DNA of 64,000 bases from Haplodiscus bocki (GCA_965655095.1 OZ296653.1:26908001-26972000), one strand, 5' to 3'; positions 16,101-42,498 are shown, counted from the first letter of the stretch. Notes: a model not told the origin generated them from the letters alone. A program made the numbers and translations.

Positions 16101-18334
16101 ACCTGACATGCGTGGGAATTGACAATATCAATATCTACTTACAGGCTGTTTTTCCTCCTATGAGAAAAAATTTTTTCCATGATCTATATTCCCCTAACCA
16201 AATTCTCCTGGAAGGCGTTTTGTCAACCTGAACGATGGTTCCACAAACTTTTCTGTTGGAATACAAAACTTCCCAATTCATTCTTCCTCAGTGAGCTACG
16301 TGCTTTACTTCTGCGACTCCGGATCCTGATTTTGGATCTGCTTGTCACAGTTATCCCCTGGAATTTGCCAAATGTGCTTGATAACAAAGCCTGTCAACTA
16401 TCGTCGTTTTCACTTTTAGGAACTTTGTTTCTTGGATTACGGAAATTAAAGATGATACTCCTAATGTAAAAGCGATGGAGGCTTTCCGGTTGCGTCTTTT
16501 TTTGATGTTAATTATGTCCAATTTAGTGATTTCGGAATGAGAATTTGTTGAAATTCTCAAAAGTCTTGGAATTCTAAATGGTACAGGAACCCAAATTGGT
16601 ACAAAGAGCAACAATTGTATGGAATATGGGACAGTTGTTGTTGGCTCTAGCGTTTGTGCCACACTGCTTTTTTAATTTCAAGCCAGTTTCAACATTCCAC
16701 TCACGTTCATAATCAGACCAAAAACGAACATTGGTTTCCTAAAAGTTTCAGAGTCACTAAATAAGGATCAACTTTGTAAAAATACAGAAACGCTGCATTA
16801 ATTTTAAGCTGACGAGTATCAGAGATGATGATATCATGCTGTTTTCAAACCATTTTTTTGACTGCCTACTCGCTCTCAAAAAGGTGATTCTGTAGCGCCT
16901 AGTCTGGAACATAATGATTTAATCTCTCAATTTGTTCTGCGTGCGCGTAAAAAGAAGGTACTGGGTTGTTTTCTTATACTCAGAGTGGTAAAACAAAATT
17001 TCACGATCAAATCCGCCAATGCAAAATTTTTCGGACTCAATGTTTTCCAGGAAAGTGAATTGATCTTCAAATCACGACGACTTAGTTCAGCAGCTGGTAA
17101 AAGATGTCGCAACTAAATCGTCATATGGTTCATTCGCTGCACTGCTTAAAAGTTTTCATCGACCTTTGCCACCCAAGGAAATAGAGTACTTTTTGAAAGT
17201 TTTTTCAATGTTTTTCATTTTACAAATTTTTCTGTTACCTCTAAGCCTTCAATTGGCGCCCCATCAATCACAACAAAAACAACGCCGTCCTCTTTTACAA
17301 AAAAACTAATGTAATTTTTTACAAAAAATTTTGAAGCACCAGCGAGTGAAACAAGATTCTGCCTAGTACTTATAGGATTGCTATGTTTGATGCGCTGCAG
17401 GTCAGAGATTGGCAAAAACCGTCCCATACTATTTGTTAAAGGATCCTTTTGAGGCACTCGATAAAGCTTTCATCGCTTTTTGTCAACTGTAGAGTACTGT
17501 GCGTTTTTGAAAGTTTGAGAAGTTTTTTTTTACATTAAAAAGTAGCTTGTTTTTCCTCCAAACTGCAGTATCTTTTAAAGCAATGAGGTTTCCTAAGTTA
17601 GTATAGCAAAGAATGCAGCATTTTATCAATGCAAATCATTGTAGGTGGAATGAACTAACGTACCTAACAGTTATGTATCTGTGTGGTTTGATGTTCAAAG
17701 AATTGCCTTGAAGTGTGCAAATTCATAGTACAAGGTCTGTTTCCTACAATAGCAAGCTATCTACAAGTTTTAGAAATTACTAATAGGCTCACCAGGCCCT
17801 GCAATTGAAATGTTTTCAGTGGCTCGGGTAACATACTTAAAATTTGCTGACAAGAATCTGCCAGAACAGCAACTTTTTTAGTTTTCCGTCCCCCGGCATC
17901 ATGAACCTCATTTTGTGTAGTGATCTTTTAATAGCACATTTCTTCGGACAACGCTCTTTTCCAAAAGAAGCTGACAAAAACTGATTTTTTCCAGAAAATT
18001 GTTCTTTTGAGCTCGAGGTGACGAAGAAATAATTCATCGCCAATAGGTTTATTAAGCTTGCCCAATTGCAAATTGTTGGTTTGAGTTAAGATGTGTAAAC
18101 TATCTTCCTAGATGCGGATTGTTGGGAGAACAAATTTTTCGGAAAATTTTACGCTTTTGAGCATTGTGAAACTAAAGTTAAGTTCTATTCAAAAACATTT
18201 TTTGGACTTCTACAACAAATGTTGAGTTTAGAGATGTAACATCAGTTTTTTTATGCGGACGCAAATTTTGTCCTGAAAAAATCTTTTTGTGTCGGGCAAA
18301 AGAAGCTTATCTGTTTACAAAGGTGGTTCCAATT

Positions 18335-24300: not shown

Positions 24301-25098
24301 CTGGTTTTTGGGCTCGGCCCCACGTTGGTTTTGTTTGTTGAGAGTTAAACATTGGAACTACTTTTTTATGGACCCAAGGCCTCGCACAGAGAGAGCAAAT
24401 TTTGCAGATTAGTTTTGCACATTTGACCTTTTCTGTCCACTTATGCCCTTTGTCTTTCCTATAATACAAGGTGTCCGGATGAACTTTTTGAGGAATACCT
24501 TTTTTGATAAAAATAATCTTTTTCCGATTATTTTTGGACATCGAGCGAAAAAAGTTTGGACTTTCTACGAAAATAATTTCGGCAGGGTTGTCAAAACTGG
24601 ATTCTACCTGTCCGGAGGAACGTATTGGAAAACAACTGAGAACAAACTATGTGTTCAAGATTTTAGAAAACTAATCGCACTTAGGACGAGAAAAGTTTAT
24701 GCAATTTTGAACCTTCTCCGTCAAAAACTCCTATCTGTGAAAACCCCAATTAAATCTAACAAATCGGTAAGCAGCGTGTTCAAATCCTATCACAATCTAT
24801 TTTCGTATACTTAAACCAGAAAAAAAACATTTTTGTTTCAAACATTAAAATCAAGTCCGTCCTATGAGAGTCCTTTGAGCCACACCGGCGGTGACAATTT
24901 GGCTCTTCGCCGCTTGTTATCACGTACAACGTGCCATTTAGTCTGATATGTTGCTGTGTAGTTACACTAGGATCTCAGTACTCAATCCCATACTGTTGAT
25001 GCAGCGAAAACTCATGACTCATTTGTTTCAAGAAAATTGACGGAGCTTCCGACTTTTGGCTTACAAACAACATGCTGAACGTCCATGACTTGTACGTC
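18335..25098 (+). repeat. Three diverged tandem copies of a ~2.2-2.3-kb unit (~18335-20643, ~20644-22921, ~22922-25098)
   Basis: The block aagtccgtcctatgagagtcctttgagccacaccggcggtgacaatttgg...aaacaacatgctga recurs at ~20381, ~22697 and ~24853. A single inverted copy lies at ~9650-12345. Confidence 0.88.
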
Positions 25099-27059
25099 TG
25101 TCGCAGGTTGCCGCCTGTGACGGCATGATCTACTCCGTCAATTACAACGGGCAGAACTCAGTCACACAGAGCTACGCTCTGCCCTTATTTGAAGACTAAT
25201 ATAATAGAACTAGCCTTTAATAAACCGCTGGAAAAAAACCCCCCACCACTTTGAAGTTATATTTTTATATATACTTATATACTAATATATAAATATATAT
25301 ATATAATCTTACAAATATTTATGTATTTATGCGCAAAATCCATACAAATATCGATGAAGCTTGTATCATGAAGGAAAGGTCATAGACAAATGTTTATAGT
25401 GCTCAACTTATTTGCAGTCTTATACTCAAATTTGATTGGTCAAAGACAAGCGATCGTATCAAACACTGACCAAACAGAAGCGCCGCCTAAACATGGTCAA
25501 AATTGGTCACTGGGACCTAATTTTGACCACTTTGCTCAGTGCCAGTGGTCGCTTCCAAACGAAAGGCGAAATACGGCCAAATGAAACCAGAAAGCCAATG
25601 TATGAACAGACATAATTAAAAATGTTGCTATGTACTTATATAAACATATAATTATGTGATTATGTGTTGTAAAATTATTTAGTGCCAATAATTATTAAAT
25701 CCTGAGTGAAAAATATTACCTAGTCAAAAGACGGTCATTGTGCCCACTTTTGACCACCATACTTTGACCTAAAATTAAAACCTGTGTATAAACCTTAATA
25801 TTATAATCATTGCCATATTTAGTATATTATAACTATATTTAACCATCCATTATATGAAATAAGCATGCAAACATGGTTTTATTATCCCTGAACATTTATC
25901 CAGTTTCCATGACCATATTTTGGTGGTCATGGTTTTGCGGCATATATTCTTTGATGCTACCCATATTACTATTTTTAAAACTAACGTCATGATGACGAAA
26001 CATATATTTCGGGTTAAACCTCTTTGATGTTGTTTATATTACTATTTTTAAAACTGACGTCATGATGACGAAACATAGTTCGGGTTGAACCCCCTTTGAT
26101 GTTTAATATAAATAGAACCCGAGGACATGACGTCAAAGAAGTGAGCCCTCCAATTGGACAGCGAAGATGAGGAAAAGGGGGCGAACCTAAAAGAAAAATC
26201 ATCGCCAGAAGAGTGTTTTTCCATCCTGAAAACAGTTCACTGTAACGATCATTTAAACTGATGCAATTTATTTGTGGATTATCTGTATTGTAAGAGAAGA
26301 AAACTGCCCTCTTCAAAACAGACGATTATAATACTCTTTGAAACTGACATTATTCTTTGTCCCTGTTAAAACACTTTACAAACATTGTAACTTGAAGTAT
26401 CATTTCATTTTTGTGTCACTGTTGACTTTCGCTGTTATTACAATTCAGTTATTAAACAAACATGGTTTCTACCAGAAAGAAAAGGCAGTCAAGCAAAAGA
26501 CTCCTCAACCAATTAGATGATTTTGATCAGGACGTGATCATTGGCAACACCACAAGCGAGAGGCCAGAAAATGTTGTGGTCAATGGGGGTGTTGATGACC
26601 AGGATTTTACCGGTGGTACTTCTAATGTTAGTTCAATAGTTAATGAGAACGCATTGAATGTGAAAACTTTGGAAAGGTGTTTTAACGAAAGGATTGATAG
26701 GGAAATGAGCAATATTGTGGACACAGTTGAAGATAGGATACAGAATGCGGTTTTGACCGCCATTGATAACATTGTCACTCCTAAAATTGAATTAGCTATT
26801 AGGTCAATAAATGCATCCTCTGGACAAGATGTGACCAGTGCGTCTGGAAACTCAGAACGTAGGGAATATGAGGGGATTAACGCCTCTTTTGAAAACGCAT
26901 CTGCAAACAACAGAACATTAGGTATGGCTAATACGAACGATGAAACTCGCCACGATTTTCATGACGGAGTGAGCGAATTACCGGTCTTAGAGGCACAGTT
27001 TGACCGGCAACTAGCTACTCACCACATGCCGTCAGGAGCTAGTAGCGAAGTTCATCACA
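25099..27059 (+). repeat. 5' LTR of family A element
   Basis: TGTCGCAGG...GAAGTTCATCACA. Colinear with 39581-41541, differing by about a dozen substitutions counted by eye. Confidence 0.95.
25964..26160 (+). promoter_or_regulatory. Putative LTR promoter/enhancer: ~73-bp direct repeat x2, CRE-like TGACGTCA (26055, 26128), TATAAATA (~26107), CCAAT (~26150)
   Basis: Motifs read directly. TGACGTCA also occurs about 300 nt upstream of gag in the family-B LTR (46637). Function is inferred. Confidence 0.45.
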
Positions 27060-28435
27060 TGGTGACAGGAGTTAAAGAACGCCACGACATGCTGACAGAA
27101 GGTTCACAACAGATACACAACCGTCATCACATGGTGACAGGAGTTAAAGAACGCCACGATATGCTGACAGAAGGTTCACAACAGATCCACAACCGTCATC
27201 ACATGATGACAGGAGCTAAAGAACAAATTCATAACCACCATGACATGGTGGCAAGAGGTGCAGAAGAGTTTCGCAATAGTCATCACATGGTAACAGGACA
27301 AACAGCCCACATAAACCAAATCCCTGAGTTCTTGACTGGACGCACTCAAACATCACGCAACCCGTCATCTCACCAATATCAGAACCTGTCAACACAAGTA
27401 TCACAAGACAACAATTTACCAGTGGTCGAACATACACCAACACATCAAAATTTAGACGCAAACAACTCCATCAATCGTCTAGCTGACGCAATTGCTGGAA
27501 TTACCACCCAACAACCATCACAAGCAACCATAATGCTCAAACCAGTATCCACAAGCACACTATCTTTCGATGGCAAAAATGAGAAATTCGAACTATTTGA
27601 AGACCTTTTTCACACAATGCTCAAAATGCAACCTGAAAAGACAGAAGCCATGAAAATTAACCATTTTCATGCTCATTTACGAAAAGAAGCACTTCAAACA
27701 TTCAGAAACATCAGTGCAGTCAATAAAAAAACTCTTGATGACGTATTAATTGTTTTCCGACGCAAATATGTCAAACCCGAATCACAAGCTACAGCTAAAC
27801 ACAAATGGCACAAACTTACATTCGATCCCAATACAAAATCACTCCCTGATTTCTTAGAAGAGCTCAACGAATGTGCCGAAAAAGCGTTCGGTGACAACGC
27901 CCAACACATGATTGACAGCTTATTATACGCAAAACTACCACCCCATTTGAAAAGATCACTCAACTTAGCTCATTTGGAAAACGGCACGTATGACCAGATA
28001 GTGGCACATCTTGAAAGAGAGCTAGAACTCAGCGGCTTAGAAAATGATGGTGAGTTGACAATACCCACAATGACAACCGTTCCACTAAATGATAACCAAC
28101 AAAACACTGAACAAACAAAAGTAGTATGCTACTACTGTAAAAAACCAGGCCACGTAATCCGAGATTGCCGTAAACGAATGAGAAAGGAACAGGAACGGGG
28201 GAATGATCCTTCAACCCAAAAGATGAAACCTTCGACATCTAAAACATATGCACCATGTCCTCATTGTCAACGGACAAATCACCCTCCAGAACAGTGTTGG
28301 AGCGGTCCTAACGCCGCTAACAGACCTAAACGGTTCAAACAGGCGTATCCAGAAGACAATCAAAATGATGGGCAAAACCATGGGAATTTGACCTATTCAG
28401 GACCATCATCAATTCTCAAAAACTCTTTAAACTAA
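26462..28435 (+). CDS. gag: Gag polyprotein (657 aa) with two CCHC zinc knuckles; start codon lies inside the 5' LTR
   Basis: CYYCKKPGHVIRDC and CPHCQRTNHPPEQC knuckles, capsid-like FDGKNEKFELFEDLF region, and position upstream of pol. Confidence 0.92.
   Translation: MVSTRKKRQSSKRLLNQLDDFDQDVIIGNTTSERPENVVVNGGVDDQDFTGGTSNVSSIVNENALNVKTLERCFNERIDREMSNIVDTVEDRIQNAVLTAIDNIVTPKIELAIRSINASSGQDVTSASGNSERREYEGINASFENASANNRTLGMANTNDETRHDFHDGVSELPVLEAQFDRQLATHHMPSGASSEVHHMVTGVKERHDMLTEGSQQIHNRHHMVTGVKERHDMLTEGSQQIHNRHHMMTGAKEQIHNHHDMVARGAEEFRNSHHMVTGQTAHINQIPEFLTGRTQTSRNPSSHQYQNLSTQVSQDNNLPVVEHTPTHQNLDANNSINRLADAIAGITTQQPSQATIMLKPVSTSTLSFDGKNEKFELFEDLFHTMLKMQPEKTEAMKINHFHAHLRKEALQTFRNISAVNKKTLDDVLIVFRRKYVKPESQATAKHKWHKLTFDPNTKSLPDFLEELNECAEKAFGDNAQHMIDSLLYAKLPPHLKRSLNLAHLENGTYDQIVAHLERELELSGLENDGELTIPTMTTVPLNDNQQNTEQTKVVCYYCKKPGHVIRDCRKRMRKEQERGNDPSTQKMKPSTSKTYAPCPHCQRTNHPPEQCWSGPNAANRPKRFKQAYPEDNQNDGQNHGNLTYSGPSSILKNSLN
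27020..27307 (+). repeat. In-frame tandem array of eight LTR-end/primer-binding-site-like units (CAYSAYA-TG(G)TGACAGGAG consensus); active PBS at 27060
   Basis: Units start at 27020, 27053, 27083, 27125, 27155, 27197, 27239 and 27281 (spacings 33, 30, 42, 30, 42, 42, 42 nt) and encode H(H/D)M(V/L/M)TG-like peptides. Confidence 0.85.
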
Positions 28436-28500
28436 AAAAGCCACGACTCCAATGGGCAGATTACACATCAGTCAGACAATATGTTATATCTGACCCACCC
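28426..28500 (+). promoter_or_regulatory. Programmed -1 ribosomal frameshift signal (T TTA AAC plus downstream stem)
   Basis: Heptamer 28426-28432 is in correct X XXY YYZ phase immediately before the gag TAA. The -1 frame is open from there into the pol ORF. A GTCAGA...TCTGAC inverted repeat lies at 28471-28494. Confidence 0.85.
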
Positions 28501-31500
28501 CCTACAATATATCACTCTCATCAAACCCTCAACACAGGAATTCCATCAGTTGTCTGGCAGCAACAAATGGAAAAAGCCTATATTCGAAGATACAATACCA
28601 CGCATGTCATTCACAAAACATATCCAGCGTACGAATACGACTACACAGACAACTTCGACACTTACTTCAGACCCCTTGCAGAAGTCGTTGCATACGACCC
28701 ATACTTTGTTGACCCTCAATATGGATTGGATCCCTATTGGGATGACGAAATTTATGATCAGGACAAATTGGAGTACAAAGATACTTACAATAAACCTAAT
28801 GATCAGATCGAATCCGATGATCCGATCACGGATGCACATGTATCACACGCACTACGATACGCAGTGATAGATTTATGGACAGTCAATCCACAATTACCTG
28901 ACACATCACCGTTACCACACTTCCGACCGAGACCACCAAACCAACAAAGGCAAAAAGCAGTCATCGATGACCAAATTTTACCACAGCTCCAGGTAACGCC
29001 AGACGGACTCACAAGGTTTCTCCCGCTCTCAACAAATTTGCCATTAAAAAATAAACGAAAAATGCTTTATTTTCCAATGGATTTCGGGGAGTTAAATATT
29101 GATGGCCTCATAGATACAGGTGCTTTGTCAAGCGCCATTCCGGAAGCCGACTTACGCAAAATTCGATTACTCGCCCCACATACAATATTAAATGAAGGCC
29201 CACCACCTGAGTTCCAAATTATGGTTGCCAATGGACAGTTAGAAGCACCTACTGCAACAGTAGAATTGCAATTCGAAGTCGGTGACATTACGTTCAGAGA
29301 AAAGTTCATAGTTATGACGAACCTCACAAGCCCTTTGATCGGTCTCTTATTCCTACAACGCAACAGTACTATTCTAGATATGCGTCAAGGAATTCTGAAT
29401 TTTCCCTTCTTTTCAATGCAATTGAAAAATGAAGATCGGACATACCCAAACGTTATTGAACCCATAATCAACCCAGTAGATACTACGCTACAACCGGGAA
29501 AACGAACCACAATTTGGGTAAAATCACAAATTTACACGGAAAACGAAGCGACAGGCATAATCCAACCTTCGCCACTTCTGGAAAACGACGAAGATCTCCT
29601 TATTTGCCCAGCAATTTCGTCAACCCAAAACAACAGACATATGGTCCAAATCAGCAATTTTCTAGACCATCCGTATACTCTCAAAAAAGGAACACATATG
29701 GCAAATTTCTCCATATTGACTCCTGAACAAACAAAGCACATTCGACCAGTCAACCCTACTTCGGTGAGACATTTCCTCAACAGTAATCACGATGACGCTA
29801 TTCATTACATAAATAGCCTTCTGAAGACATCGCAACCGGATGAAGTCAATGAGACCTACTGGTTTCCAACGACACAAAATCCGGGCAATGAAAAGGAACA
29901 TACGCCCATACAGACACGCATTCTTAATGAACTACGAGAATTGGAACAATTAGAAAAATTAAATCCACTTGAAAATACCAAATCCCGAAGCCAATTTCTA
30001 TCTAATTTCGATTGGACAGATTCTACTTTACAACCGGATGCCAAACAAGCCGTTGAAGACCTGCTCGTGGAATTTCATGATATCTTTGCGCGACACCGTT
30101 TTGACATCGGAATCAACACAGAATTCAAAGTACAACTCACACCACTAGACAATAGGCCTGCTTACAGTCAAAGCCTCCCAGCTCCGATAAATCTCAAAGA
30201 TGATATCCTTGTGGAACTAGCCCTATTACACAAGTATGGTATCATCACAACACTACCCTTCAGCAAATATGCTAGTCCAATATTCGCACAAAGGAAACCA
30301 AATGGGAAACTACGCCTATTAGTTGACCTTCGGAAAATAAACACACTTATTGCAGATGATTACATCAACAACAACCACCCAGTCAGTACATTAACAGATG
30401 CAGCACAACACATGGCTGGGAAAAATCTGTTCTGCAAACTCGATTGTTCCCAAGCATATCATTGCCTCCAAATGGCCGACCAACAATCAATTGAGCTCCT
30501 TGCATTTAATTTTGCAAGCAGAACATTCGCGTACCGAAGATTGGCACAAGGACTTAGCCGTTCCCTATCAGCATTTTCAAGCTTCATACGCGAATACCTC
30601 GACCCAGTCATCAAAGCTGATCAATGTGCACAATACGTCGACGATATTGGCATAGCCGCCAATACCCCCGAACAATTAATCAAAAACTTACGAGCAGTTT
30701 TCCAATGCTTGCGGAACGCTGGCCTCAAACTCAGCGTGACCAAATGCCATTTCGGAGTACAAGAAGTAGATTTCCTTGGACGAACAATAACAACCAAGGG
30801 GGTTGCCCCTCAAAAACAAAAGATTGCTAAATTCCTTGAAAAAGTCAAATTTCCACGATCCAAAAAAGCACTCCAACGATACATCGGATTCTTGAACTAT
30901 TACCGGAATTATATACTTAGATTGGCAGAACGGCTCACCCCGTTCTTCCAGCTACTCAAAACAACCGATGCCAAAGACAAAATACCGATTACACCTGATA
31001 TCATGAAAGAGTTCAGGGAAATAAATGACGCTTTAGACCGATGTTGCCAATTGGCATTACGTCAGCCATTACCCGGTAAACAACTGGTCCTAATGACCGA
31101 TGCAAGCTTTCAAGCAGCTGGTTACGCAGTATTAATTGAAGACGATCCAAACCAAAAGTTTACTTCAACACGCAAAACTTACGCTCCTATAGCTTATGGT
31201 TCAAAAACATATTCACCATCCCAAATCAAAATGCCCATCTACGCAAAAGAAATTTTAGCCATCTATATGGCCTTCAAAGAATTTGGACATATCTTTTGGG
31301 GCGCCACTAAACCAGTGATCATCATGACAGACAGCAAATCGGTCACCAGATTCTTTCAAACAAAGATGATCCCCCCACCCTTATGGAATGCCTGTGACTT
31401 TGTATTACAATTCAACTTTACTATCGCACACATTCTAGGTAAAATGAACACTGCAGCAGACTTCTTATCTCGTTTGGAGATGGACCCTAATGAAAAAATC

Positions 31501-33790
31501 ATTCTAAAGATCAGAGAAGACATTCAAATAAAACCAATCGAAGTAAACATTGAATCTACAGGCATTGCACAAGAAGAACCGGTCTTCTTTGATCCCACAG
31601 ACCAACAAGAGACCACGGAAAAAGAACTCTGGAAACGTAAAGAAGAAGTACGAAATGCCATACCTAATGAACCACCAGTCATAACAGTGTCCTGTTATTA
31701 CGCCAATGACCTACACAAAGATACAACAATTGTGAACATAGCACAATTGACGAAACCATCACGCATACTCATCGAACAAGACTCAGATCCAACCCTACTA
31801 AATTTCAAACGTGAAATGCTGGGATTACCATTTGACGAACAAATTTTACTAAACGACGCACGTTACATGCACTACTCCAGAAACAAGAAGCGTATCATCA
31901 TCAAGGATGACATTCTCTACCGACAAAACTATAACGATATCGGCGAAGTCAGTCACCTACAAGTCCTTTTGCCCGGACAATTACTTAAAGTGTTATTACA
32001 ATCATTACATGGGACAGCTGGCAAACACCCAGGTATCTCAAAAATGATGCGAGAAATTCGTCAGAAATACTATTTCACTTCAATTGCACCCCACGTTCGA
32101 AACTGGGTTCGTGACTGTGAGATATGCATCCATGACAAACGCATAAACAACACACGAATAACCCCAGAAGTAATCCACATCCCAGAATGGGACCTCGGAC
32201 CAGAAGATCTCATGCAAATTGACTTATTGCCAGAATTACCGCCAAGTGGAGGTTATGAAAATATCATTACGGCGATAGACGTATTTTCGAGATACGCATT
32301 CGCCTATCCAGTATCTAACCCCACAGCAGTAAATACAGCCAAAGTTATCATAGACATTATGACAAGACATGCTTATTTGCCTACCCTCATTATAACAGAC
32401 AAAGGAAGCGTTTTCGTCTCCCAAATCATACATGAAGTCGCTGAAATATTGGGCATCAATTTGAAACATGCCACAACAAAACATGCACAAACCATCGGAG
32501 TCCTAGAACGGGCCCATGCCACAATCAAGACCTCCTTGAAAATGGCATCAGGCGAACACAGAAAACAATGGCATAAATACTTACCTATCGCCATTTTGAA
32601 TTACAACACGACATACCATTCCAGTATCGATTGTGAACCAAGCCGAGTATTCCACGGCAGAGTACCACACAATATTTTAGACCACAAACTTGGATTAAGA
32701 TTCAATCCCAATATCACACCTACTACAGACTTTGCTGAAGAATTACTACGGCGAACCAAAATCCTCTACGACAAAACCAAGAAAAACGTCATGCAGTCAT
32801 ATATCAAATACAAACGATATTACGATAAAAAAAGCAAAAGCTTCACCTTTAAAAGAAAAAGATTACTGCTTTATCCTTCAGCCAAATGCAGACCATCAAG
32901 GGTCAAAAATACCGTTCCGTGACTTCCGATGGATTGGTCCCTACATAGTAGAAAAAGTATTACCAAACAATAATTACATTGTGCGAAAACTCAACACAAA
33001 CAAAACTCAGATTCTACACAGAATTCGTCTCCGAAAATACAACCCTGAAAAACGCCCTGAAGCTAATTATTCGGAAGTGCCATGGCAAACCGACGACAAT
33101 ATTGTTGTCCCGCAGGACGATTTATATACAATTGCATGGGAAGCTGAATTCGGCGGACACCTCTTTGATCTTCCCATCATATATACCGATCCCAACGCAA
33201 TTGACTTTGATGAAAATCACACACAAGGACCAGATACAGTCATTGTCCCACGCTCTTATTTCCAAAACTCAAACAATGGTCAAAATAGGGAAATTTGCCC
33301 CATTTCTGACCAACCAGTACCGCGAACTTTAACACCTACATCGAATGGTCAAAATCAGGAAATTGAGACCAGTACTGACCCAACTCAAAATGATAGCACC
33401 AAACACATTTATGACTCAAGTACCGACGCTGAAATTACATGTAAACCTGTCACACAACCACCATTAACTATGAGTGACACTTCATCAACGCTTGATGACA
33501 ACATTCCCACAGCTGAAAACACTTCCAAAAATGAGTCCGACCACTCTCGAGGCGGTAAATACAACCTACGCCCCAATCCCAATCCTAATTACTCAGAAAT
33601 ATACAGATATCGATGTGTGCAACATTTTATTTTCAGCCCCATTTTTGCGCGTCATTATCATTTTTCATTCTATCTTTTGCGCACACTCTACTCATTTCTT
33701 TCCTTTTTCTTTTCTTGGGGCATATACAAAATTATCAAGAACGTCAACAAAGCCAAACTACAATCAATCAAAAAACAACAAACTAATTAA
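28426..33790 (+). CDS. pol: Pol polyprotein (protease, RT, RNase H, integrase with GPY/F tail); one frameshift at an A7 run (~32827-32833)
   Basis: LIDTGA (protease), LRLLVDLRKIN / KLDCSQAYH / YVDD (RT), TDAS (RNase H), H-x5-H...CEIC and QID/TDKG/LER (integrase). The frame continues as KAKASPL...RWIGPYIVEK in ORF 32732-33790. Confidence 0.93.
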
Positions 33791-33815
33791 TAACAACAAC
33801 AGCTTTAATTAAGAG

Positions 33816-36800
33816 TCAGGACGATTCAGTGTTCGAAGTTTTGCGCTTTGATCGCAACTTCCCAGATAGCAAATCAGCTACTCCACGATAATGCGTCTTA
33901 CTAATATCGATGCGAGGCCGCTGCGCTGGACGACGACGCTGTTCTGGTAGTCTCTCAGAGACAAACACTGGTTCACTCAACGATGCAGATGACTCCACAT
34001 CACTAGCAACCTTCACCGCCTTGTATGATTTCTCAAGCTCAGCTCGAATTTTCTCATAATCGTGATAATTGACAAATTCCCAGGGATTATAACCACACTG
34101 CAGAGCACAATCGCCAAAAGTCTCGAGCAATTCCATGCAACACGAAATCGACTCGGGATCAGTGAAAAAGTTCTCCTCAGTATCACAACCCAAAAGATAC
34201 CCCTGCAGCGGCTCCACAACTGACGACAAATCAACACTCGCCACTCCAACTTTACTTGAGCCAAGCGAAACATCAGGCACTTTTGGGGTAATATGACCCA
34301 AACACAAACAACTCAATTTGAACAGATCCCATGTATACTGTCTGCGTGACAATTCAGGGCAAGACGACAGGAAAGAGACCATATCGTCAACATCTGGACC
34401 AACACCCAACTCGTTCAGATAAACATGTCTCACATCGTCTACGAACTCTATGTAGTCGTCAGCGTGCACGTTCCGCAACTCCCGTGCAACCCAACCCCGG
34501 GAACTGAAGCTTTGGAATAAATGTTGGAAGCAGTCAACAGCAACAGTCTTCGGTAACTTGAACAAAACTCCATAATCAAAGCAAGCTAGCCCAATAACCA
34601 AGTCTGACTTGAATGCGGGATGTCTCACTAACTCCTTAACCACATATTTAACGTATTGTCTGCCCTGGTCAATGAAAGGATTGAAAGACTCGCCCATCAC
34701 CGTCTTCGCCACACTATCCGACTTCGCCTTCTTCCCACGCTCACGCTCCACATCAATTTTTGTCTTGGCGACCTTCAACACTTTGGACCGGAATTCTGTC
34801 TTTCGCATAAATTCAAAGATGCTCAACAGCTCACCCACAGAAAAATCAAAGGATCGCAATGCATCCCAATCCCATTCAGATGGCAGACAGCCACGAGACA
34901 CAACCCTCCGCAACAAACGATGTAAGAAGTCACACAGTTGACCGCACAAGAAAAACCCTTGGTCACGACTGGGCACTGTTGACCGTTTGAAAGCCTCCCG
35001 GTACTCTTGCACAATCACTTTGAACAGTTCCAGACGAGCTTCGAAATAAGGATCACCAGTGACTTGACTATCCAAAGCTTGAACCTAAAATACGAGACAA
35101 TTAAAAACGTTATCACTTGCATTCAACCACATAACAACTATACCCACCCTCCCCTGCACGTGCTGGAACTCTTGACGTTGACTAGTACTGCTGATATATG
35201 CCACAATTTGGGGCCAATGCGCAATCATCTCTTGAACAACAAGGAAAGCAGTGCACAACTCTAATTTTCCATCTTCCAGAGCCTGCAAACATACAATTAT
35301 CAGTCAGCACTTATACTACCAAGACAACCAAAGGGCAACATTACCATTACCTACCATTCTGAAGTACTGTGTTGACTGCACCCAGCGTTCATCGAGGAGC
35401 CCTTTTAACCGCAACAAAAGAGCACGCAACATCGAACACATGTCGATCCTCCCCATCACACTGAAGCTGGGTTTGTGCAACAAACGCTCAAACTGCATAG
35501 GTGTCAACGAAAACGGGTACTGAACACCCGCCTTCCGACCAGGACTTTTATCCAGAACTTTCACAAAGTCAGCATTTGAGCCGCCACAACAAATGATGGT
35601 CGCATCGCCAGAAATCGCACTCAACAATCGGGAAACAAGATCAATATAGCTTTTTGTGGGCGGAACATCCCTTCCACAATGTAACATGGGCAGGCACACC
35701 AAACGCTTGCCCTCCCAAAAACACAGACTCAATGTGCGGCGATGTGAGCTCACAGAAAATTCAATGGAGTATGCCCCCTCACGAGCAATACTAGATGACA
35801 CATGTTTCACCAACTCCAGAAACAGATGATGCAGCAATCCCTGAAATAGCACAAATCGCATGAAAATTAATACCCCCCATACTCCAGCCGGTCAAATACA
35901 AAAAATCCCGACGACTTTTGACTCTACATGTAATACCCACCCAAACAGACTATCAATCCATGGGCAAAAGATGGCACAAATACCAGATTATGACCATAAC
36001 AAAATATGCTCATATACGTACGGAAATGTGGCTCGAGCTCCAATTGAAGTCAGCAGTGCTCGCAGAATGACCCGTCAACACTCCCACCTGGGTCCAGTAC
36101 TCCTCCAACGTCCACAATTGACCTCCTCCACGCAGGAAAATTAACAACAACTCAATCTGTATCAAAGTCCGTGAATTTACAGAGGTAAATGTAAAGGGCT
36201 TCTCTTCCACAACATAATAGAACGGACGTTTGTGATCCAACTCCGGCACATCCAAGTGCATGAACAGCTCCCTCTCCGCTTCCAACTTCGACCCATACAG
36301 TGTACGTCCATCCGAGCCACGTACCTTTGAAGGATAGTACCGGGCACGAAACCTCTGATCAGCCCTCAGATGATGCTCCCGTTGGAAGTGGCGCTTCAAC
36401 TCATATAATCCTCGAGATCTCATGGACACGTTCCTCCTACAAAGCATGCAGTAGAAGCAATGACGGTTCTTCAATGGGTTTTCTGGACCAGTAGCAAAAA
36501 CTTTCGCAAACGGGGCGAGCTCCAGCATCTCCTCGGTGAAAACATACCCACCACCATCTGACCCACTGGGCGAAATTGGGTTCGGTCGACCTTCTCGTGA
36601 CCACTTATACAATTCACCTTTTTTCAGCACATCGGAACGAATTTGCCCAAGAGTCTTCAAACTGTCCGTGTCATTAAATTTGTTCACTTCTGTTCGAGAG
36701 AAACCCAAAACTGCATCTGCCTGACGACTCGAACATGGTTGCTGTAATTGATCACTATCCAATGATTCCGTAATTGTTGGCAAAGAATAGAAAGATCGAG

Positions 36801-37935
36801 AAGCCACACTATCCACAACTGTAGACCCTGACCCACTACGTGAAACAGACCGCCCACTTCCCCTCTCACCAACATTTCTCCCAGGCTTTCCACCAATCTT
36901 CAAAAGAATATCCTCCAGCATTCCAAAAGTGGCCAAAGAAACTTCTAATCCGACGGCCCTGGCAAATTGTATCATTTGATCCGAACTCAGTCCGGTCAGT
37001 TGCTGATGCGGATCCAATTGCACAGGCGGATTGTCAGCGAAGCACTCTTTCAACAGGGTCCTTGCAGACTCACTGGGGTAGTATTTCGACCGCCCACCAC
37101 CCAAACCAGGCTGCGCTGTGGCTCCAGAAACAGCTGGAAGATCAGACTCTACAACTTCAAAAACCCACCCCCCACTCAAATTATCGACTCGTCTTCGGGC
37201 AATTGACTCCAACTCTGACGTACCATACTCTGTGTCATCCAGTCGGGAACTACTAGGGAACGACTGCCCAGTATCTGACATACCAATCACAGGATATCTA
37301 TTACACACCGATTTCCCAATTGAGTCTTCCACATCAAATGCCACACTTTTTGAAGGCCGTTCATCTGCCACGTCAAGCTCCCCATCACACAACGGCCGCT
37401 TCATCCCGACACCAATCTCCTGGCCCCCCAACTCCGCACGCAAAATCTTATCCACCTGACTCCTGGGAAATTCATTGTCACCAGTTACCATGCCACGCCC
37501 TGTATTATCCCGATTAACCAGATTCGAATCCAGCAACTCAAGCACTCCAGCAGGATCAACCTCCGCAATACTCTCTATTCCATCACCCCCCAGCGCTTCC
37601 AGTTTATCTCGCAAAAACTTCTGCAGTCCTTCACTTCCTTCGTCACTACTCGACAACAGACACTCTTGACTACCAACAGCAAAACTCTCCTTATCCACAT
37701 TCCCGCGTTCTTCACTCATTGTCTTTTTACCACCCGTCACTTGCAAGACTGCCAAACTTTTCGACGGAGAAGTTCCTGTCTCCTCAATCATCACGATTTC
37801 TACTCCGCTCCTCCGGGGAAGATCGGGGTAGTTCTCACTTTCTTCAGTGTTGCAGTCTTTAGGCACGTTGGATTCGTTCTCTAAACAATGGAAACTGATA
37901 AATTTACGTGGCAACTCGCCAGCATATTCGCCCAT
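33816..37935 (-). CDS. Predicted spliced antisense gene, ~1267 aa, BED zinc finger / hAT-transposase-like; exons 37935-36022, 35840-35355, 35282-35148, 35084-33816
   Basis: Four consecutive minus-strand ORFs are joined in frame by three phase-0 GT-AG introns: TCC|GTACGT..TTTCAG|GGA, ATG|GTAGGT..TTGCAG|GCT, AGG|GTGGGT..TTTTAG|GTT. FYCMLCRRNVSMRSRGLYELKRHFQREHH is a BED-type C2H2 finger. The start codon is uncertain (first ATG used; the frame is open to 37983). Confidence 0.75.
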
Positions 37936-38898
37936 TTCGAAACCGGATATCCGTAGAGGAAACACGTGTTCGTTCAAAATCAAATCTATCGCGTGTTATC
38001 CTAGCAGTGAAGAGAGAAAAATTGCTCTGGCCAAGCAATCAAACTGCCTTCACTCATCAAGTAGTTCTTGATTCGACATATTCCGACATAATAAAAAGTA
38101 TCACAAAACCCAACACTCACCCATTCAGTAACAGCGATGAAATCTCTGGATTCTCTAAGGACGCTGGCTCTGTCTCCAATTTGTTCGAACACAAGTTAGC
38201 AGAATTCCAAAAACAAGTCCAAAACACGTGGTAAAACAAACAATAATCAATTCAATCACAATTCAAAAACAAGATAATCGAATGCAATATCAATTCAAAG
38301 TTAAACAATTTCAAGAGATGAGAGAGTCGTGGCTGTATAATATGGATTTTGTCATATTATGGTCATTATTGACATGATATTTACCTATCTAACTATATCT
38401 ACATATTTACAAGCTGGGTCAACTTCTGCCAGAGTTGCCCAATATTTGACCTTCGGAATTTCCATCTTTACAACTTTCATCAAAACTTCATTCATTTTCT
38501 TTAATTTTCCTTCGCATCATTATGCTTCACGCTCATTGGCTCTCACTGTTACAAAAGGTGAGCTTACACTCATCAAAGTGAAGTGCCGCTTCAGATTCAC
38601 TACCACGGTCACTTACGGTTATTGATGACCACTTGAAATCCAAGAGTCAATACAACTGTGAAATAAATTACTTAATATCAAAACATGATTTCTTTTAACC
38701 TAACCGCCTTAACCCAACCAACCCTCTCAATTCAACGAAAGTCAAAAACCCGCCATATTTTCCCCAAAAAAACCCTTCAGAATTTTACCCAACTTTCATT
38801 CATACTTTCAGTCTTCAACAAAAACGGTCGCTTTACTTCAAAACTTAGTTTATTCAATCACGGCACTGAAACATTTCAAGAAAAGAGCCTTCGCACAT

Positions 38899-39681
38899 AT
38901 GACTACCACATTCCGTATAGAAGGAGATGAAGAGCCCATGGCAACGGAGCCGATATATCTCTCAAGCGATGAGAGCGAATATTCGACTCCCAACACAACT
39001 CCAGATCACCAACTTGAATGCATTCATCCTGACTCGATCAACCAGTTGATAGCCTCACAACTGGAACAACGGTCAAATATGGGCGCAGAGACCATCGTCT
39101 ACCCGCCAACCCCAAACACGTCTATAATCTCTGCCGACGACGACCCAATGAACCCCACTCCAATAATTGGAAACCCTGATCACTATACGCCTCAGATCCC
39201 ACCCAGACGCCATCACCCAATACAACTTTGCCAACATGTGCAACCTATCCCCGATACGCCGCAATCTCCAACCCCGGAAGATCGTGGGCAGTCAGACGAC
39301 TTCTATCCCGACAATATCCCACTACACAACCCCCCCAATATTGTAGCAGTAGCAGACGACTTGCACAACCTAACATTACACCCTCATCCGCACCGTAACG
39401 AAGTGGTTACAAGTTGTTTGGTATGTGGCAAATCATACGACCAGGTGATCGAAGAAACTGTTGCAGACTACCTCGATCAGACATCACAAACGGGTGAGAC
39501 AGTGCGGGAACGACAAATCAAGAGAAATGCATTCATCGATGGCGTTCAGAGCGGAGTCTTCACTTTTATCCTCCCGGGAGTGTCGCAGGCTGCCGCCTGT
39601 GACGGCATGATCTACTCCGTCAATTACAACGGGCAGAACTCAGTCACACAGAGCTACGCTCTGCCCTTATTTGAAGACTAA
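38899..39681 (+). CDS. Accessory ORF3 (260 aa; Pro/acidic low-complexity N-terminus, CLVC motif), terminating 101 nt inside the 3' LTR
   Basis: ATG-initiated open frame followed by AATAAA at 39701. The C-terminal SQAAACDG..Y..NY...LPLFED peptide is conserved in the family-B LTR. Confidence 0.7.
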   Translation: MTTTFRIEGDEEPMATEPIYLSSDESEYSTPNTTPDHQLECIHPDSINQLIASQLEQRSNMGAETIVYPPTPNTSIISADDDPMNPTPIIGNPDHYTPQIPPRRHHPIQLCQHVQPIPDTPQSPTPEDRGQSDDFYPDNIPLHNPPNIVAVADDLHNLTLHPHPHRNEVVTSCLVCGKSYDQVIEETVADYLDQTSQTGETVRERQIKRNAFIDGVQSGVFTFILPGVSQAAACDGMIYSVNYNGQNSVTQSYALPLFED

Positions 39682-41541
39682 TATAATAGAACTAGCCTTT
39701 AATAAACCGCTGGATAAAAACCCCCCACCACTTTGAAGTTATATTTTTATATATACTTATATACTAATATATAAATATATATATATAATCTTACAAATAT
39801 TTATGTATTTATGCGCAAAATCCATACAAATATCGATGAAGCTTGTATCATGAAGGAAAGGTCATAGACAAATGTTTATAGTGCTCAACTTATTTGCAGT
39901 CTTATACTCAAATTTGATTGGTCAAAGACAAGCGATCGTATCAAACACTGACCAAACAGAAGCGCCGCCTAAACATGGTCAAAATTGGTCACTGGGACCT
40001 AATTTTGACCACTTTGCTCAGTGCCAGTGGTCGCTTCCAAACGAAAGGCGAAATACGGCCAAATGAAACCAGAAAGCCAATGTATGAACAGACATAATTA
40101 AAAATGTTGCTATGTACTTATATAAACATATAATTATGTGATTATGTGTTATAAAATTATTTAGTGCCAATAATTATTAAATCCTGAGTGAAAAATATTA
40201 CCTAGTCAAAAGACGGTCATAGTGCCCACTTTTGACCACCATACTTTGACCTAAAACTAAAACCTGTGTATAAACCTTAATATTAATATCATTGCCATAT
40301 TTAGTATATTATAACTATATTTAACCATCCATTATATGAAATAAGCATGCAAACATGGTTTTATTATCCCTGAACATTTATCCAGTTTCCATGACCATAT
40401 TTTGGTGGTCATGATTTTGCGGCATATATTCTTTGATGCTATCCATATTACTATTTTTAAAACTAACGTCATGATGACGAAACATATATTTCGGGTTAAA
40501 CCTCTTTGATGTTGTTTATATTACTATTTTTAAAACTGACGTCATGATGACGAAACATAGTTCGGGTTGAACCCCCTTTGATGTTTAATATAAATAGAAC
40601 CCGAGGACATGACGTCAAAGAAGTGAGCCCTCCAATTGGACAGCGAAGATGAGGAAAAGGGGGCGAACCTGAAAGAAAAATCATCGCCAGAAGAGTGTTT
40701 TTCCATCCTGAAAACAGTTCACTGTAACGATCATTTAAACTGATGCAATTTATTTGTGGATTATCTGTATTGTAAGAGAAGAAAACTGCCCTCTTCAAAA
40801 CAGACGATTATAATACTCTTTGAAACTGACATTATTCTTTGTCCCTGTTAAAACCCTTTACAAACATTGTAACTTGAAGTATCATTTCATTTTTGTGTCA
40901 CTGTTGACTTTCGCTGTTATTACAATTCAGTTATTAAACAAACATGGTTTCTACCAGAAAGAAAAGGCAGTCAAGCAAAAGACTCCTCAACCAATTAGAT
41001 GATTTTGATCAGGACGTGATCATTGGCAACACCACAAGCGAGAGGCCAGAAAATGTTGTGGTCAATGGGGGTGTTGATGACCAGGATTTTACCGGTGGTA
41101 CTTCTAATGTTAGTTCAATAGTTAATGAGAACGCATTGAATGTGAAAACTTTGGAAAGGTGTTTTAACGAAAGGATTGATAGGGAAATGAGCAATATTGT
41201 GGACACAGTTGAAGATAGGATACAGAATGCGGTTTTGACCGCCATTGATAACATTGTCACTCCTAAAATTGAATTAGCTATTAGGTCAATAAATGCATCC
41301 TCTGGACGAGATGTGACCAGTGCGTCTGGAAACTCAGAACGTAGGGAATATGAGGGGATTAACGCCTCTTTTGAAAACGCATCTGCAAACAACAGAACAT
41401 TAGGTATGGCTAATACGAACGATGAAACTCGCCACGATTTTCATGACGGAGTGAGCGAATTACCGGTCTTAGAGGCACAGTTTGACCGGCAACTACCTAC
41501 TCACCACATGCCGTCAGGAGCTAGTAGCGAAGTTCATCACA
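39581..41541 (+). repeat. 3' LTR of family A element
   Basis: Direct repeat of 25099-27059, followed immediately by the TSD ACGTC. Confidence 0.95.
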
Positions 41542-41552
41542 ACGTCCATTAG
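40944..41552 (+). pseudogene. Gag N-terminal ~199 codons carried by the 3' LTR, running into flanking DNA and stopping after NVH
   Basis: Near-identical to Gag residues 1-199; diverges exactly at the LTR end. Confidence 0.85.
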
Positions 41553-42498
41553 CTTTCGAAGTCTTCACTTCCTGTGGGTAATTCACTCATCAGATCGCAG
41601 CTTTTGATTAAAATTTCACAAAAAATTAGTTCGAGTTCTACGGGAAGTGAAAGAAGACTAGAATGTAAATTTCGCAATCACAAAGGGTACATGAAAGCGA
41701 ATTCAAAAGCAGTGGTGATTAGACAAAATTTACTTGATACAATTAAAACGGATATTGTAATGATCAGGGTACAATCTAACTCGAGTCTACCTTACCAACA
41801 ATAAGGTGGCGAAGTGGATGAAATTGAAATGTCAGAGTTTGTTTACATTGTCAAAGATAAATGTTCAATTGCAAATATTGAAATTGTGAATACGTAATTT
41901 GAAGAAAGGATCAGCATTCGGATCCGTTCCCTTATCTCGGTTATCTGCACAAGGGTTTTTGAATACAACAATAACGCAGCTGGTAACCAAAAATTTCTTT
42001 CCCTAGTTTTCTCAGTGTTCTTCGCAAATCCCATTATCGGTCCACAGGATGCACCAGGCATTTGGAGGCTCCTCTGGTCTTCCACTTTCAGAGCGAGGTC
42101 TCGAGGATTTTCCCTATTAATTGATCAAAACGCATTTTTCCAGGCGAAACACGAGCGCCTAAGTTGTCTTCGTTCTCAACATATCGACGTTTTCTCGACC
42201 TGATTTTGCAATTATCAAAACAAAATTTTCAACTCGTTTCTGTGATCCCAGTTTTTGTTGTTATATTTTTTACTTGAACTTTTTTGTCATTTTTTGAACG
42301 CTTCCAACGATCTGCTTCTCTTTCTGTGTTCCCAACAAGTTTTCTATTGGTGCAATGTCCTTTTCAGAAGTCGAAAGGGAAGGAACATTGACGGATAAAT
42401 ATCGTCAGCAATACAGTCTAAAAATACACCAAAAATCAAGCATGCTACATGATAACTGAAAATCGAAACTTTTCCATGAAAATTTTCTTCTCATTGAT

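What the first reader, a model, noticed from the sequence alone, without database searches (positions are those of the whole stretch)
33816..37983. LTR retrotransposon carrying an intron-containing antisense gene derived from a BED-finger/hAT-like DNA transposase
Seen: four minus-strand ORFs inside the intact element are joined exactly in frame by three phase-0 GT-AG introns (36021-35841, 181 nt; 35354-35283, 72 nt; 35147-35085, 63 nt). The product is about 1267 aa with no internal stop. It has a long Ser/Gly/acidic N-terminus and a BED-type finger (CMLC-x16-H-x4/5-H). Downstream segments sit where the hAT catalytic region would be (SIAREGAYSIEF, lacking the Asp of F/YSLxxDE) and where the hAT C-terminal region would be (CPELSRRQYTWDLFKLSCLCL). 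Established: introns in the sense orientation are lost on retrotransposition, while antisense introns are not spliced from genomic RNA and so persist. Inference: the element has domesticated a probably catalytically dead class II transposase as its own DNA-binding accessory factor (anti-silencing, targeting or transcriptional control). The gene ends tail-to-tail just after pol, I see no TIRs or 8-bp TSD, and by eye the region shares the element's A/C-rich plus strand. All three points argue for long residence rather than a fresh nested insertion.
Basis: partly seen in the sequence, partly recalled or inferred. Interest (0 to 1): 0.92.

Follow-up and report, generated by a model that had tools for sequence, protein, structure and literature searches.

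The report
Retrotransposon with conserved spliced antisense gene
A young, high-copy Ty3/gypsy retrotransposon carries on its opposite strand a four-exon gene for a 1267-residue zinc-finger protein that its relatives have kept under selection for a long time; the protein may descend from a hAT DNA transposase, but that origin is only weakly supported.

Summary
Four minus-strand exons (37935-33816) join in frame through three GT-AG introns at the stated coordinates and give a 1267-aa protein.

The gene is an integral part of a complete 16.4-kb Ty3/gypsy element (25099-41541):
- The LTRs are 1961 bp and 99.3% identical, with a 5-bp target duplication ACGTC.
- All 30 fetched genomic copies carry the gene with the same flanks.
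- 89 of 90 splice-site pairs are intact, and 13 of 30 spliced frames are open.
- Pairwise dN/dS is 0.38, against 0.76 and 1.25 in the wrong frames.
- Relatives in four other ENA assemblies share only 26-34% protein identity (pol 62-66%). They keep the tail-to-tail position next to pol. Where contig and divergence allowed a check, they also keep the intron positions.

A recent nested insertion and chance ORFs are therefore excluded.

The hAT/BED origin is only weakly supported. Hermes and DUF4371/FAM200-ZBED5 families top several fold and language-model searches. However, no Pfam, PDB-sequence or profile match reaches significance, and no DDE triad is conserved.

Expression and splicing could not be tested because no RNA run is available. 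Function is inferred, not shown.

First-stage readers noted the same kind of gene at ten or more other places in this genome.

The parts
25094..25098 (.). Target-site duplication ACGTC, 5' copy
   Evidence: The same 5 bases follow the 3' LTR at 41542-41546.
25099..27059 (+). 5' LTR, 1961 bp, TG...CA
   Evidence: 99.3% identical to 39581-41541. The termini were read. Six other genomic copies end at the same base as the 3' LTR.
27060..27077 (+). Primer-binding-site-like sequence TGGTGACAGGAGTTAAAG, directly after the LTR
   Evidence: It is repeated at 27132 within a 72-nt tandem repeat. Which tRNA it matches was not tested.
26462..28435 (+). gag ORF (657 aa); it starts inside the 5' LTR
   Evidence: zf-CCHC E 2.6e-5, above Pfam's cut-off; Retrotrans_gag is weak (E 0.0025, below the cut-off). 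ORF coordinates.
28567..33790 (+). pol (PR-RT-RNaseH-INT), in two overlapping frames: 28567-32922 and 32732-33790
   Evidence: RVT_1 E 2.5e-24, RT_RNaseH, Integrase_H2C2 and rve pass their cut-offs; Integrase_p58_C lies just below its cut-off.
33816..35084 (-). Antisense gene exon 4 (422 codons plus stop). An all-alpha domain is followed by a poorly modelled tail that ends in basic stretches
   Evidence: In the model, residues 1-262 are helical and mostly at pLDDT above 85. 784 representative clusters match at E<=1e-3. Basic stretches RRRPAQRPR and KLRSKRK located.
35085..35147 (-). Intron 3 (63 nt, GT-AG, phase 0)
   Evidence: Kept in 29 of 30 copies. Same exon break in L031.
35148..35282 (-). 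Antisense gene exon 3 (45 codons)
   Evidence: Homologous exons in L031, L034 and L057. pN/pS 0.48.
35283..35354 (-). Intron 2 (72 nt, GT-AG, phase 0)
   Evidence: Kept in 30 of 30 copies. Same position with GT-AG in L057.
35355..35840 (-). Antisense gene exon 2 (162 codons). The homologous stretch of relative P0391 (from L033) is predicted as beta-beta-beta-alpha-beta-alpha, an RNase-H-like topology
   Evidence: Secondary structure of the P0391 model (low confidence). Language-model neighbours of the window's own exon 2 are PilM/FtsA, which I recall have an RNase-H-like fold. pN/pS 0.44.
35841..36021 (-). Intron 1 (181 nt, GT-AG, phase 0)
   Evidence: Kept in 30 of 30 copies. Same codon position in L057 (70 nt, GT-AG) and in all exon-1 ORFs of relatives, which read on as 'VS' = GTnAGy.
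36022..37935 (-). Antisense gene exon 1 (638 codons from the ATG at 37935). The N-terminal half is Ser/Gly/Leu/Glu-rich, with a conserved module at 37068-36898, followed by the finger region
   Evidence: pN/pS is 0.49 for the N-terminal part and 0.26 for the finger part.
36370..36450 (-). CCHH zinc finger (C-x2-C-x16-H-x4/5-H)
37936..39580 (-). Spacer between the antisense ATG and the 3' LTR; presumed site of the antisense promoter and 5' UTR
   Evidence: Inference only. Sequence read; no RNA data. It also holds a plus-strand ORF at 38899-39681.
33626..33809 (-). Candidate poly(A) signals of the antisense mRNA (ATTAAA at 33809, AATAAA at 33631), which would overlap the 3' end of pol
   Evidence: Use of these signals is not shown.
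39581..41541 (+). 3' LTR
41542..41546 (.). Target-site duplication ACGTC, 3' copy

Best explanation
The region is an integral accessory gene of a Ty3/gypsy LTR retrotransposon lineage. It lies between pol and the 3' LTR on the opposite strand and has four exons and three spliceosomal introns.

The protein has 1267 residues:
- a long, low-complexity N-terminal half with one conserved module;
- a CCHH zinc finger;
- a core with RNase-H-like strand/helix order but no conserved DDE triad;
- a confident all-alpha domain of about 260 residues;
- a basic C-terminal tail.

Shown here: the gene travels with the element in every copy examined. It has stayed tail-to-tail with pol while pol diverged to about 63-66% and the gene to about 26-34% identity. 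Its intron positions are conserved, and it is under purifying selection.

Inferred:
- It is transcribed from its own promoter in the 1.6-kb spacer before the 3' LTR. It is spliced and polyadenylated over the end of pol.
- The introns persist because they are antisense in the genomic RNA and so are never removed from the template that is reverse transcribed.
- The protein most likely descends from a hAT-type (Buster/ZBED5-like) DNA transposase that lost catalysis. My odds for this origin are about 0.6.
- It works in trans as a nuclear nucleic-acid-binding factor that helps the element, for example by controlling LTR transcription or chromatin state, or by guiding integration. My odds for this class of function are about 0.5, and about 0.3 for transcription or anti-silencing in particular.
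For: Anatomy: exon-intron structure; complete element with LTRs, TSD and PBS; gag and pol domains.

Integral to the family:
- 30 of 30 fetched copies are colinear over the gene plus about 1.5 kb on each side at 95-99% identity; 28 span the whole stretch, and two end about 670 bp short on the same (3'-LTR-ward) side.
- The first look found 1250 DNA and 3850 protein candidates in the genome.
- About 85 of the 99 scored exon-4 copies, at 89-100% aa identity, have an open 422-aa frame.

Selection:
- 13 of 30 spliced frames are open and 89 of 90 GT-AG pairs are kept.
- Nei-Gojobori dN/dS is 0.38, and 0.25-0.33 for the most diverged pairs. The control frames give 0.76 and 1.25.
- Every exon segment gives 0.26-0.52.

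Deep conservation:
- 784 clusters at 50% identity match exon 4.
- Relatives in ENA assemblies ERZ1742291, ERZ25074608, ERZ26859043 and ERZ26696514 are convergent with a gypsy pol.
- pol identity is 62-66% against 26-34% for the antisense protein.
- Intron positions are shared.

hAT lead:
- Foldseek ranks 1-8 are all Hermes.
- ESM Atlas fold neighbours carry Dimer_Tnp_hAT or FAM200-ZBED5 (TM 0.42-0.44).
- All ten best named language-model neighbours are DUF4371/FAM200-ZBED5.
- Sub-threshold Pfam hits are zf-C2H2_12 and zf-BED.
Against: No transcript evidence. The only runs that hold the sequence behave like genomic DNA and show no joint at the predicted introns. No intron-less junction exists as DNA in the genome.

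The hAT link has no significant sequence support:
- no Pfam hit reaches threshold;
- no PDB sequence hit;
- hhalign against a real hAT of this genome gives probability below 1%;
- the core model is poor (pLDDT 59);
- Foldseek and the language-model search with exon 4 do not point to hAT.

The function is pure inference. Selection on a trans-acting product of a multicopy element is hard to interpret.
Confidence: 0.72

Rival explanations
1. The gene is a conserved antisense accessory gene of the element, but it does not derive from a hAT transposase. It came from a host zinc-finger gene or is of unknown origin, and the hAT resemblances are fold-class noise.
Against: Several methods, on two separate parts of the protein, point to the same superfamily in the right order: for the finger+core, for the all-alpha domain. 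Finger, then RNase-H-like core, then a large all-alpha domain is the hAT layout.
Confidence: 0.35
2. It is a recent nested insertion of a hAT transposon or host gene into this one copy.
For: GC content of the gene (0.45-0.49) is slightly above gag-pol (0.40-0.43).
Against: All 30 copies carry it with the same flanks. Relatives with pol at 62-66% identity carry it at the same place. There are no TIRs. The strand skew matches the rest of the element.
Confidence: 0.01
3. The open frames are not translated. What matters is an antisense RNA, for example for dsRNA or small-RNA-based copy-number control, and the frames are incidental.
For: Antisense transcripts with regulatory roles are known for retroelements (review PMC7264820). 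No protein or RNA evidence exists here.
Against: dN/dS is 0.38 in this frame only. A frame of about 1270 codons is kept open across four exons in many copies. Protein-level conservation holds down to 26% identity, with conserved motifs and intron phase.
Confidence: 0.04
4. The protein is still an active transposase or nuclease that gives the element a second, DNA-level way of moving or of integrating.
For: RNase-H-like strand order in the core. One glutamate in the first strand ('xEF') is invariant in the six sequences compared.
Against: No conserved acidic residue at the second and third candidate catalytic positions. There are no TIRs. The element has a complete integrase and a 5-bp TSD typical of integrase.
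Confidence: 0.03

Closest known systems
Antisense additional ORFs between pol and the 3' LTR of plant Ty3/gypsy elements (aORF-3R: maize Grande gene23, rice RIRE2, Silene Retand, Tat lineages); reviews PMC7264820 and PMC4408406
   Same: Same place and orientation in the element. Present in most copies of a family. Old within lineages. Some carry transposon-related domains (Transposase_28, PMD). A promoter of its own is shown for Grande. Function is unknown and thought to be regulatory and nuclear.
   Different: No sequence relation (no Pfam hit). The host is a different, unnamed 1.5-Gb genome. Here there are three conserved spliceosomal introns, and the review does not mention introns in such ORFs. 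The protein is much larger (1267 aa) and has a hAT-like layout.
Antisense proteins of deltaretroviruses (HTLV-1 HBZ), cited in PMC7264820
   Same: A retroelement gene on the minus strand near the 3' LTR, expressed from a spliced antisense mRNA, acting as a nuclear regulator of the element.
   Different: From my own knowledge, HBZ is a short bZIP protein transcribed from within the 3' LTR. There is no sequence or fold relation. Here neither the promoter nor splicing has been observed.
Host proteins derived from Buster-type hAT transposases (ZBED5, FAM200, GTF2IRD2, SCAND3; Pfam DUF4371, FAM200-ZBED5_RNase-like, zf-C2H2_12)
   Same: These are the nearest neighbours by language-model features and appear among fold neighbours. 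The layout matches: a finger, an RNase-H-like core, then an all-alpha domain. Loss of catalytic residues is common in such proteins (own knowledge).
   Different: No match passes any family threshold. This gene is multicopy and rides inside a retrotransposon, whereas those are single-copy host genes.
Hermes transposase (PDB 2bw3, 4d1q, 8edg)
Extra ORFs captured by bdelloid rotifer LTR retrotransposons (PMC5408684) and the CERV protein of C. elegans Cer1 (PMC10309623)
   Same: Animal LTR retrotransposons that carry a third, non-env gene serving the element. CERV is needed for export of genomic RNA.
   Different: Those ORFs are in sense orientation and are expressed from spliced sense messages. 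They have unrelated domains.

Membership tests
Ty3/gypsy (Metaviridae) LTR retrotransposon | Two LTRs with TG...CA ends, a short target-site duplication, and a PBS next to the 5' LTR | tested here: met
   LTRs are 1961 bp and 99.3% identical. TSD is ACGTC. TGG... follows directly after the 5' LTR. The tRNA match was not tested.
Ty3/gypsy (Metaviridae) LTR retrotransposon | gag with a zinc knuckle; pol in the order PR-RT-RNaseH-INT | tested here: met
   zf-CCHC, RVT_1, RT_RNaseH, Integrase_H2C2 and rve pass their cut-offs, in that order; the protease models (gag-asp_proteas, Asp_protease_2) lie just below theirs.
Antisense additional ORF between pol and the 3' LTR (aORF-3R type) | ORF on the opposite strand between pol and the 3' LTR, present in most copies of the family | tested here: met
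   The arrangement is the same in distant relatives.
Antisense additional ORF between pol and the 3' LTR (aORF-3R type) | Antisense transcript from a promoter of its own | not testable with these tools
   No RNA run holds the sequence. The four runs found behave like DNA.
Antisense additional ORF between pol and the 3' LTR (aORF-3R type) | Sequence relation to the plant aORF domains (PMD, Transposase_28) | tested here: not met
   No Pfam hit to these or any other family.
hAT superfamily transposase | N-terminal BED-type zinc finger | tested here: inconclusive
hAT superfamily transposase | RNase-H-like catalytic core | tested here: inconclusive
hAT superfamily transposase | Conserved DDE catalytic triad | tested here: not met
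   At the candidate positions the family shows E/S/V (first strand), S/G ('CSG'/'CGG', after strand 4) and variable residues after 'LP' in exon 4. The register was set by eye.
hAT superfamily transposase | Large all-alpha insertion domain within the core | tested here: inconclusive
hAT superfamily transposase | C-terminal hAT dimerisation domain (PF05699) | tested here: not met
   No hit in 36 family members, even at E<=10. hhalign against PF05699-bearing ORFs of the same genome gives probability below 1%. The same model finds 150 true hAT copies in this genome.
hAT superfamily transposase | Terminal inverted repeats and an 8-bp target-site duplication around the gene | tested here: not met
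   Only two short internal inverted pairs were found.

The most novel reading that the evidence does not exclude
A whole lineage of Ty3/gypsy retrotransposons took in a class II (hAT) transposase gene long ago, in antisense orientation, introns included. The lineage has since depended on its catalytically dead product as a necessary accessory factor, for example to tether the integration complex to chosen chromatin or to protect its LTRs from silencing. That would be domestication of one transposon class by another, rather than by the host.
Probability: 0.3. Interest if true: 0.85.

Novelty: new variant of a known kind. Interest (0 to 1): 0.64.

Why it matters
Antisense extra genes of LTR retrotransposons are known mainly from plants, and their function is still open. 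This is a very abundant, young and deeply conserved example, with clear selection, conserved introns and a foldable domain. It therefore offers a tractable protein for asking what such genes do.

The conserved introns are a natural demonstration that genes carried antisense in a retroelement escape intron loss.

If the hAT origin holds, it would show a retrotransposon domesticating a DNA-transposase scaffold for its own use. That would be a route of gene flow between transposon classes which is rarely documented.

In practice, such genes will be mis-annotated as host genes (thousands of exon-sized ORFs sit unnamed in public assemblies), so naming the family would clean up annotation.

Tried and rejected
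RNA evidence. The run search returned four runs of one study, none on record as RNA. Laying them gave fragmented, very deep contigs typical of a genomic repeat and no joint at the predicted introns. This says nothing about expression.

Processed copies. 24-mers across the three exon junctions, with up to 2 mismatches, have no match in the genome.

Sequence homology to known families:
- Pfam on all exons, on distant relatives and on 70 family members: nothing over threshold.
- PDB sequence search with both profiles: nothing.
- hhalign of both family profiles against a 588-aa hAT ORF and C-terminal hAT pieces of the same genome: probability below 1%. Searches were flawed by wrong-frame ORFs and were redone. 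The hAT profile was thin (Neff about 1.5), so this is a weak test.

Other steps that led nowhere:
- Foldseek against PDB with the exon-4 model gave no meaningful hit, and exon 4 by language-model features gave only generic helical proteins.
- Papers: five completed searches found no description of an intron-bearing antisense gene or of a hAT-like gene inside an LTR retrotransposon.

I first took the 1961-bp repeat for an LTR plus the start of a second, tandem element. Six other copies that end at the same base showed that it is simply a long LTR in which the gag ORF starts.

Disclosure. One search classified variants against an in-memory column-majority state of the antisense coding region. 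That string was neither printed nor saved. I replaced it with pairwise comparisons of natural copies.
Full report
**1. What is in the sequence**

The stretch lies inside a complete LTR retrotransposon at 25099-41541.
- A self-comparison of the window gives one long direct repeat, 25099-27059 = 39581-41541, 1961 bp at 99.3% identity.
- I first suspected a tandem arrangement, because the repeat runs past the start of the gag ORF (26462). Six other genomic copies all lose homology at window position 41541-41548, so the repeat is simply a long LTR in which gag begins.
- The LTR starts TG and ends CA. It is followed by TGGTGACAGG... and is flanked on both sides by ACGTC.
- On the plus strand lie a gag ORF with a zinc knuckle and a pol with protease, RT, RNase H and integrase in Ty3/gypsy order.

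**2.

- On the minus strand the three proposed introns begin GTACGT, GTAGGT and GTGGGT. They end in pyrimidine-rich tracts plus CAG, CAG and TAG.
- All three are phase 0. Joining the four exons gives 3852 nt with one terminal stop.
- The first ATG (37935) aligns with the N-terminus of relatives' exon-1 ORFs. The protein is therefore 1267 aa.
- There are no terminal inverted repeats around the gene.
- The A/C-rich plus-strand skew of gag-pol continues across the gene.

**3. It is a real gene of the element, not an accident of this copy**

- A DNA search of the window's own 1.5-Gb genome found 1250 candidates. All 36 further matches scored are 96-99% identical, and 32 of them span the whole 4.2 kb.
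- The 30 loci fetched are colinear with the window over about 1.5 kb on each side as well; 28 span the whole stretch and two end about 670 bp short on the same side.
- In these copies 89 of 90 GT-AG pairs are kept, and 13 of 30 have the whole spliced frame open.
- A protein search with exon 4 found at least 3850 candidates. Of the 99 scored (89-100% identity), about 85 have an uninterrupted 422-codon frame.
- Pairwise Nei-Gojobori comparison of 12 natural copies with open frames gives dN/dS 0.38, and 0.25-0.33 for the most diverged pairs. The two shifted frames give 0.76 and 1.25.
- Each exon segment on its own gives 0.26-0.52.
- No plus-strand ORF longer than 138 aa overlaps the gene, so the constraint belongs to the minus-strand frame.
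- reached a similar figure, but it used an in-memory majority state as its reference. I set it aside for the reason given under Tried and rejected.

**4. It is old**

- Exon 4 matches 784 clusters (50% identity representatives) at E<=1e-3. All are unnamed, exon-sized ORFs from ENA assemblies.
- I looked up nine relatives in four other assemblies: ERZ1742291, ERZ25074608, ERZ26859043 and ERZ26696514. Wherever the contig is long enough, the homologue lies tail-to-tail with a gypsy pol.
- Against the window, pol of these relatives is 62-66% identical, but the antisense protein only 26-34%. The gene evolves fast, yet it has been kept since before these lineages split.
- The exon structure is kept too. 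L031 has separate ORFs that match exons 2, 3 and 4.
- In L057, intron 1 (70 nt) and intron 2 lie at the same codons with GT-AG.
- All exon-1 ORFs of relatives read on past the junction as 'VS', which is the donor GTnAGy.
- L034 may differ at intron 3.

**5. What the protein looks like**

- No exon, and none of 70 family members, hits a Pfam family above threshold. Neither family profile hits a PDB sequence.
- AlphaFold2 on exon 4 with 36 sequences gives a confident all-alpha domain for residues 1-262 and a poorly modelled tail.
- AlphaFold2 on a relative's ORF that spans finger, intron-1 read-through and exon 2 (P0391 from L033) gives a confident finger region. The following core is weak (pLDDT about 50-70), with strand-strand-strand-helix-strand-helix order.

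**6. The hAT question**

For:
- Foldseek of the finger+core model against 350,542 PDB chains puts Hermes transposase at ranks 1-8 (E 0.09-0.6).
- ESM Atlas fold neighbours include clusters with Dimer_Tnp_hAT, FAM200-ZBED5_RNase-like and DUF4371.
- All ten best named language-model neighbours of the finger+core are DUF4371/FAM200-ZBED5/GTF2IRD2-type clusters (0.82-0.88).
- The window's exon 2 alone lands on PilM/FtsA, which I recall to have an RNase-H-like fold.
- Sub-threshold finger hits are zf-C2H2_12, the finger that accompanies FAM200-ZBED5 domains, and zf-BED.

Against:
- Every one of these scores is below the level the tools call reliable.
- Profile-profile comparison with a genuine 588-aa hAT ORF of this genome finds nothing.
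- The PF05699 model, which finds 150 true hAT copies in this genome, misses the family entirely.

I put the hAT origin at about 0.6. Whatever its origin, the family has no conserved acidic triad. At the by-eye equivalents of the three catalytic positions the residues vary (E/S/V), are 'CSG'/'CGG', or vary. A catalytically inactive protein is therefore likely.

**7. How it probably works**

Shown: the gene's position, structure, conservation and selection.

Inferred:
- Transcription starts in the 1.6-kb spacer before the 3' LTR.
- Splicing removes three introns that the sense genomic RNA never removes, because they are in antisense there.
- Polyadenylation uses ATTAAA (33809) or AATAAA (33631), over the end of pol.
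- The basic C-terminal stretches could direct nuclear import.
- The protein then binds nucleic acid through the finger and core, and binds partners through the all-alpha domain and the long disordered N-terminus.
- By analogy with plant antisense ORFs, HTLV-1 HBZ and host proteins derived from hAT transposases, the likeliest role is control of the element's own transcription or chromatin state. Integration targeting and handling of genomic RNA are alternatives.
- None of this could be tested here. No RNA run was available.

**8. Comparison with what is known**

- Antisense ORFs between pol and the 3' LTR are established in plant gypsy elements and some fungi. Some carry transposon-related domains, and their function is unknown (PMC7264820, PMC4408406).
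- The review text does not mention introns in such ORFs. My five completed paper searches found no description of an intron-bearing or hAT-like antisense gene in an LTR retrotransposon.
- The held library is incomplete, and Repbase-type annotations could not be searched.
- I therefore class this as a new variant of a known kind.
- First-stage readers of this scan noted the same kind of gene at ten or more other places in this genome, one of them with nine exons. None of those notes has been followed up.

Noticed in passing
window 26462-27059 and 40944-41552: The gag ORF starts about 600 nt inside the 5' LTR, so the 3' LTR carries the same ORF start (202-aa ORF). This is an unusually long coding overlap with an LTR.
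   Followed up: partly
window 27053-27270: The last bases of the LTR plus the PBS-like sequence (CATCACA|TGGTGACAGGAGTTAAAG) recur 72 nt downstream (27132) in a short tandem repeat. The repeat is translated within gag as repeated 'HHMVTGVKERHDMLTEGSQQIHNR'. This may amount to duplicated primer-binding sites.
   Followed up: partly
window 25982-26135 (and the same places in the 3' LTR): Three units, 73 nt apart, each hold a CRE-like palindrome (TAACGTCA or TGACGTCA) in the U3-like part of the LTR. They are candidate host bZIP-responsive enhancer repeats.
   Followed up: no
window 38899-39681 (+): A 260-aa plus-strand ORF lies between the antisense gene and the 3' LTR and runs into the LTR start. 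It has no Pfam hit. Another first-stage note (s1-382666) covers it. L057 shows a 261-aa ORF on the same side of the antisense gene (8151-8936).
   Followed up: no
window 33819-34298: The last 160 codons of exon 4 have a much higher synonymous difference between copies (pS 0.108) than the rest of the gene (0.02-0.04), while pN/pS stays at 0.28. Unexplained.
   Followed up: no
window 8701-9653 and 41544-42496; 18300-25100: The element sits in other repeats. The DNA just after its 3' TSD matches 8701-9653 in inverted orientation at 99.7%. Upstream is a tandem array with a unit of about 2157 bp, 82-95% identical.
   Followed up: no
L033:2109-3386: In this relative, intron 1 is in frame and free of stops, so a gene caller reads finger, intron and exon 2 as one 425-aa ORF (P0391).
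   Followed up: yes
L059 (ENA ERZ25074608): Next to the antisense-gene homologue, the pol region appears duplicated and fragmented (rve and RT_RNaseH each called twice). This suggests a rearranged or nested copy.
   Followed up: no
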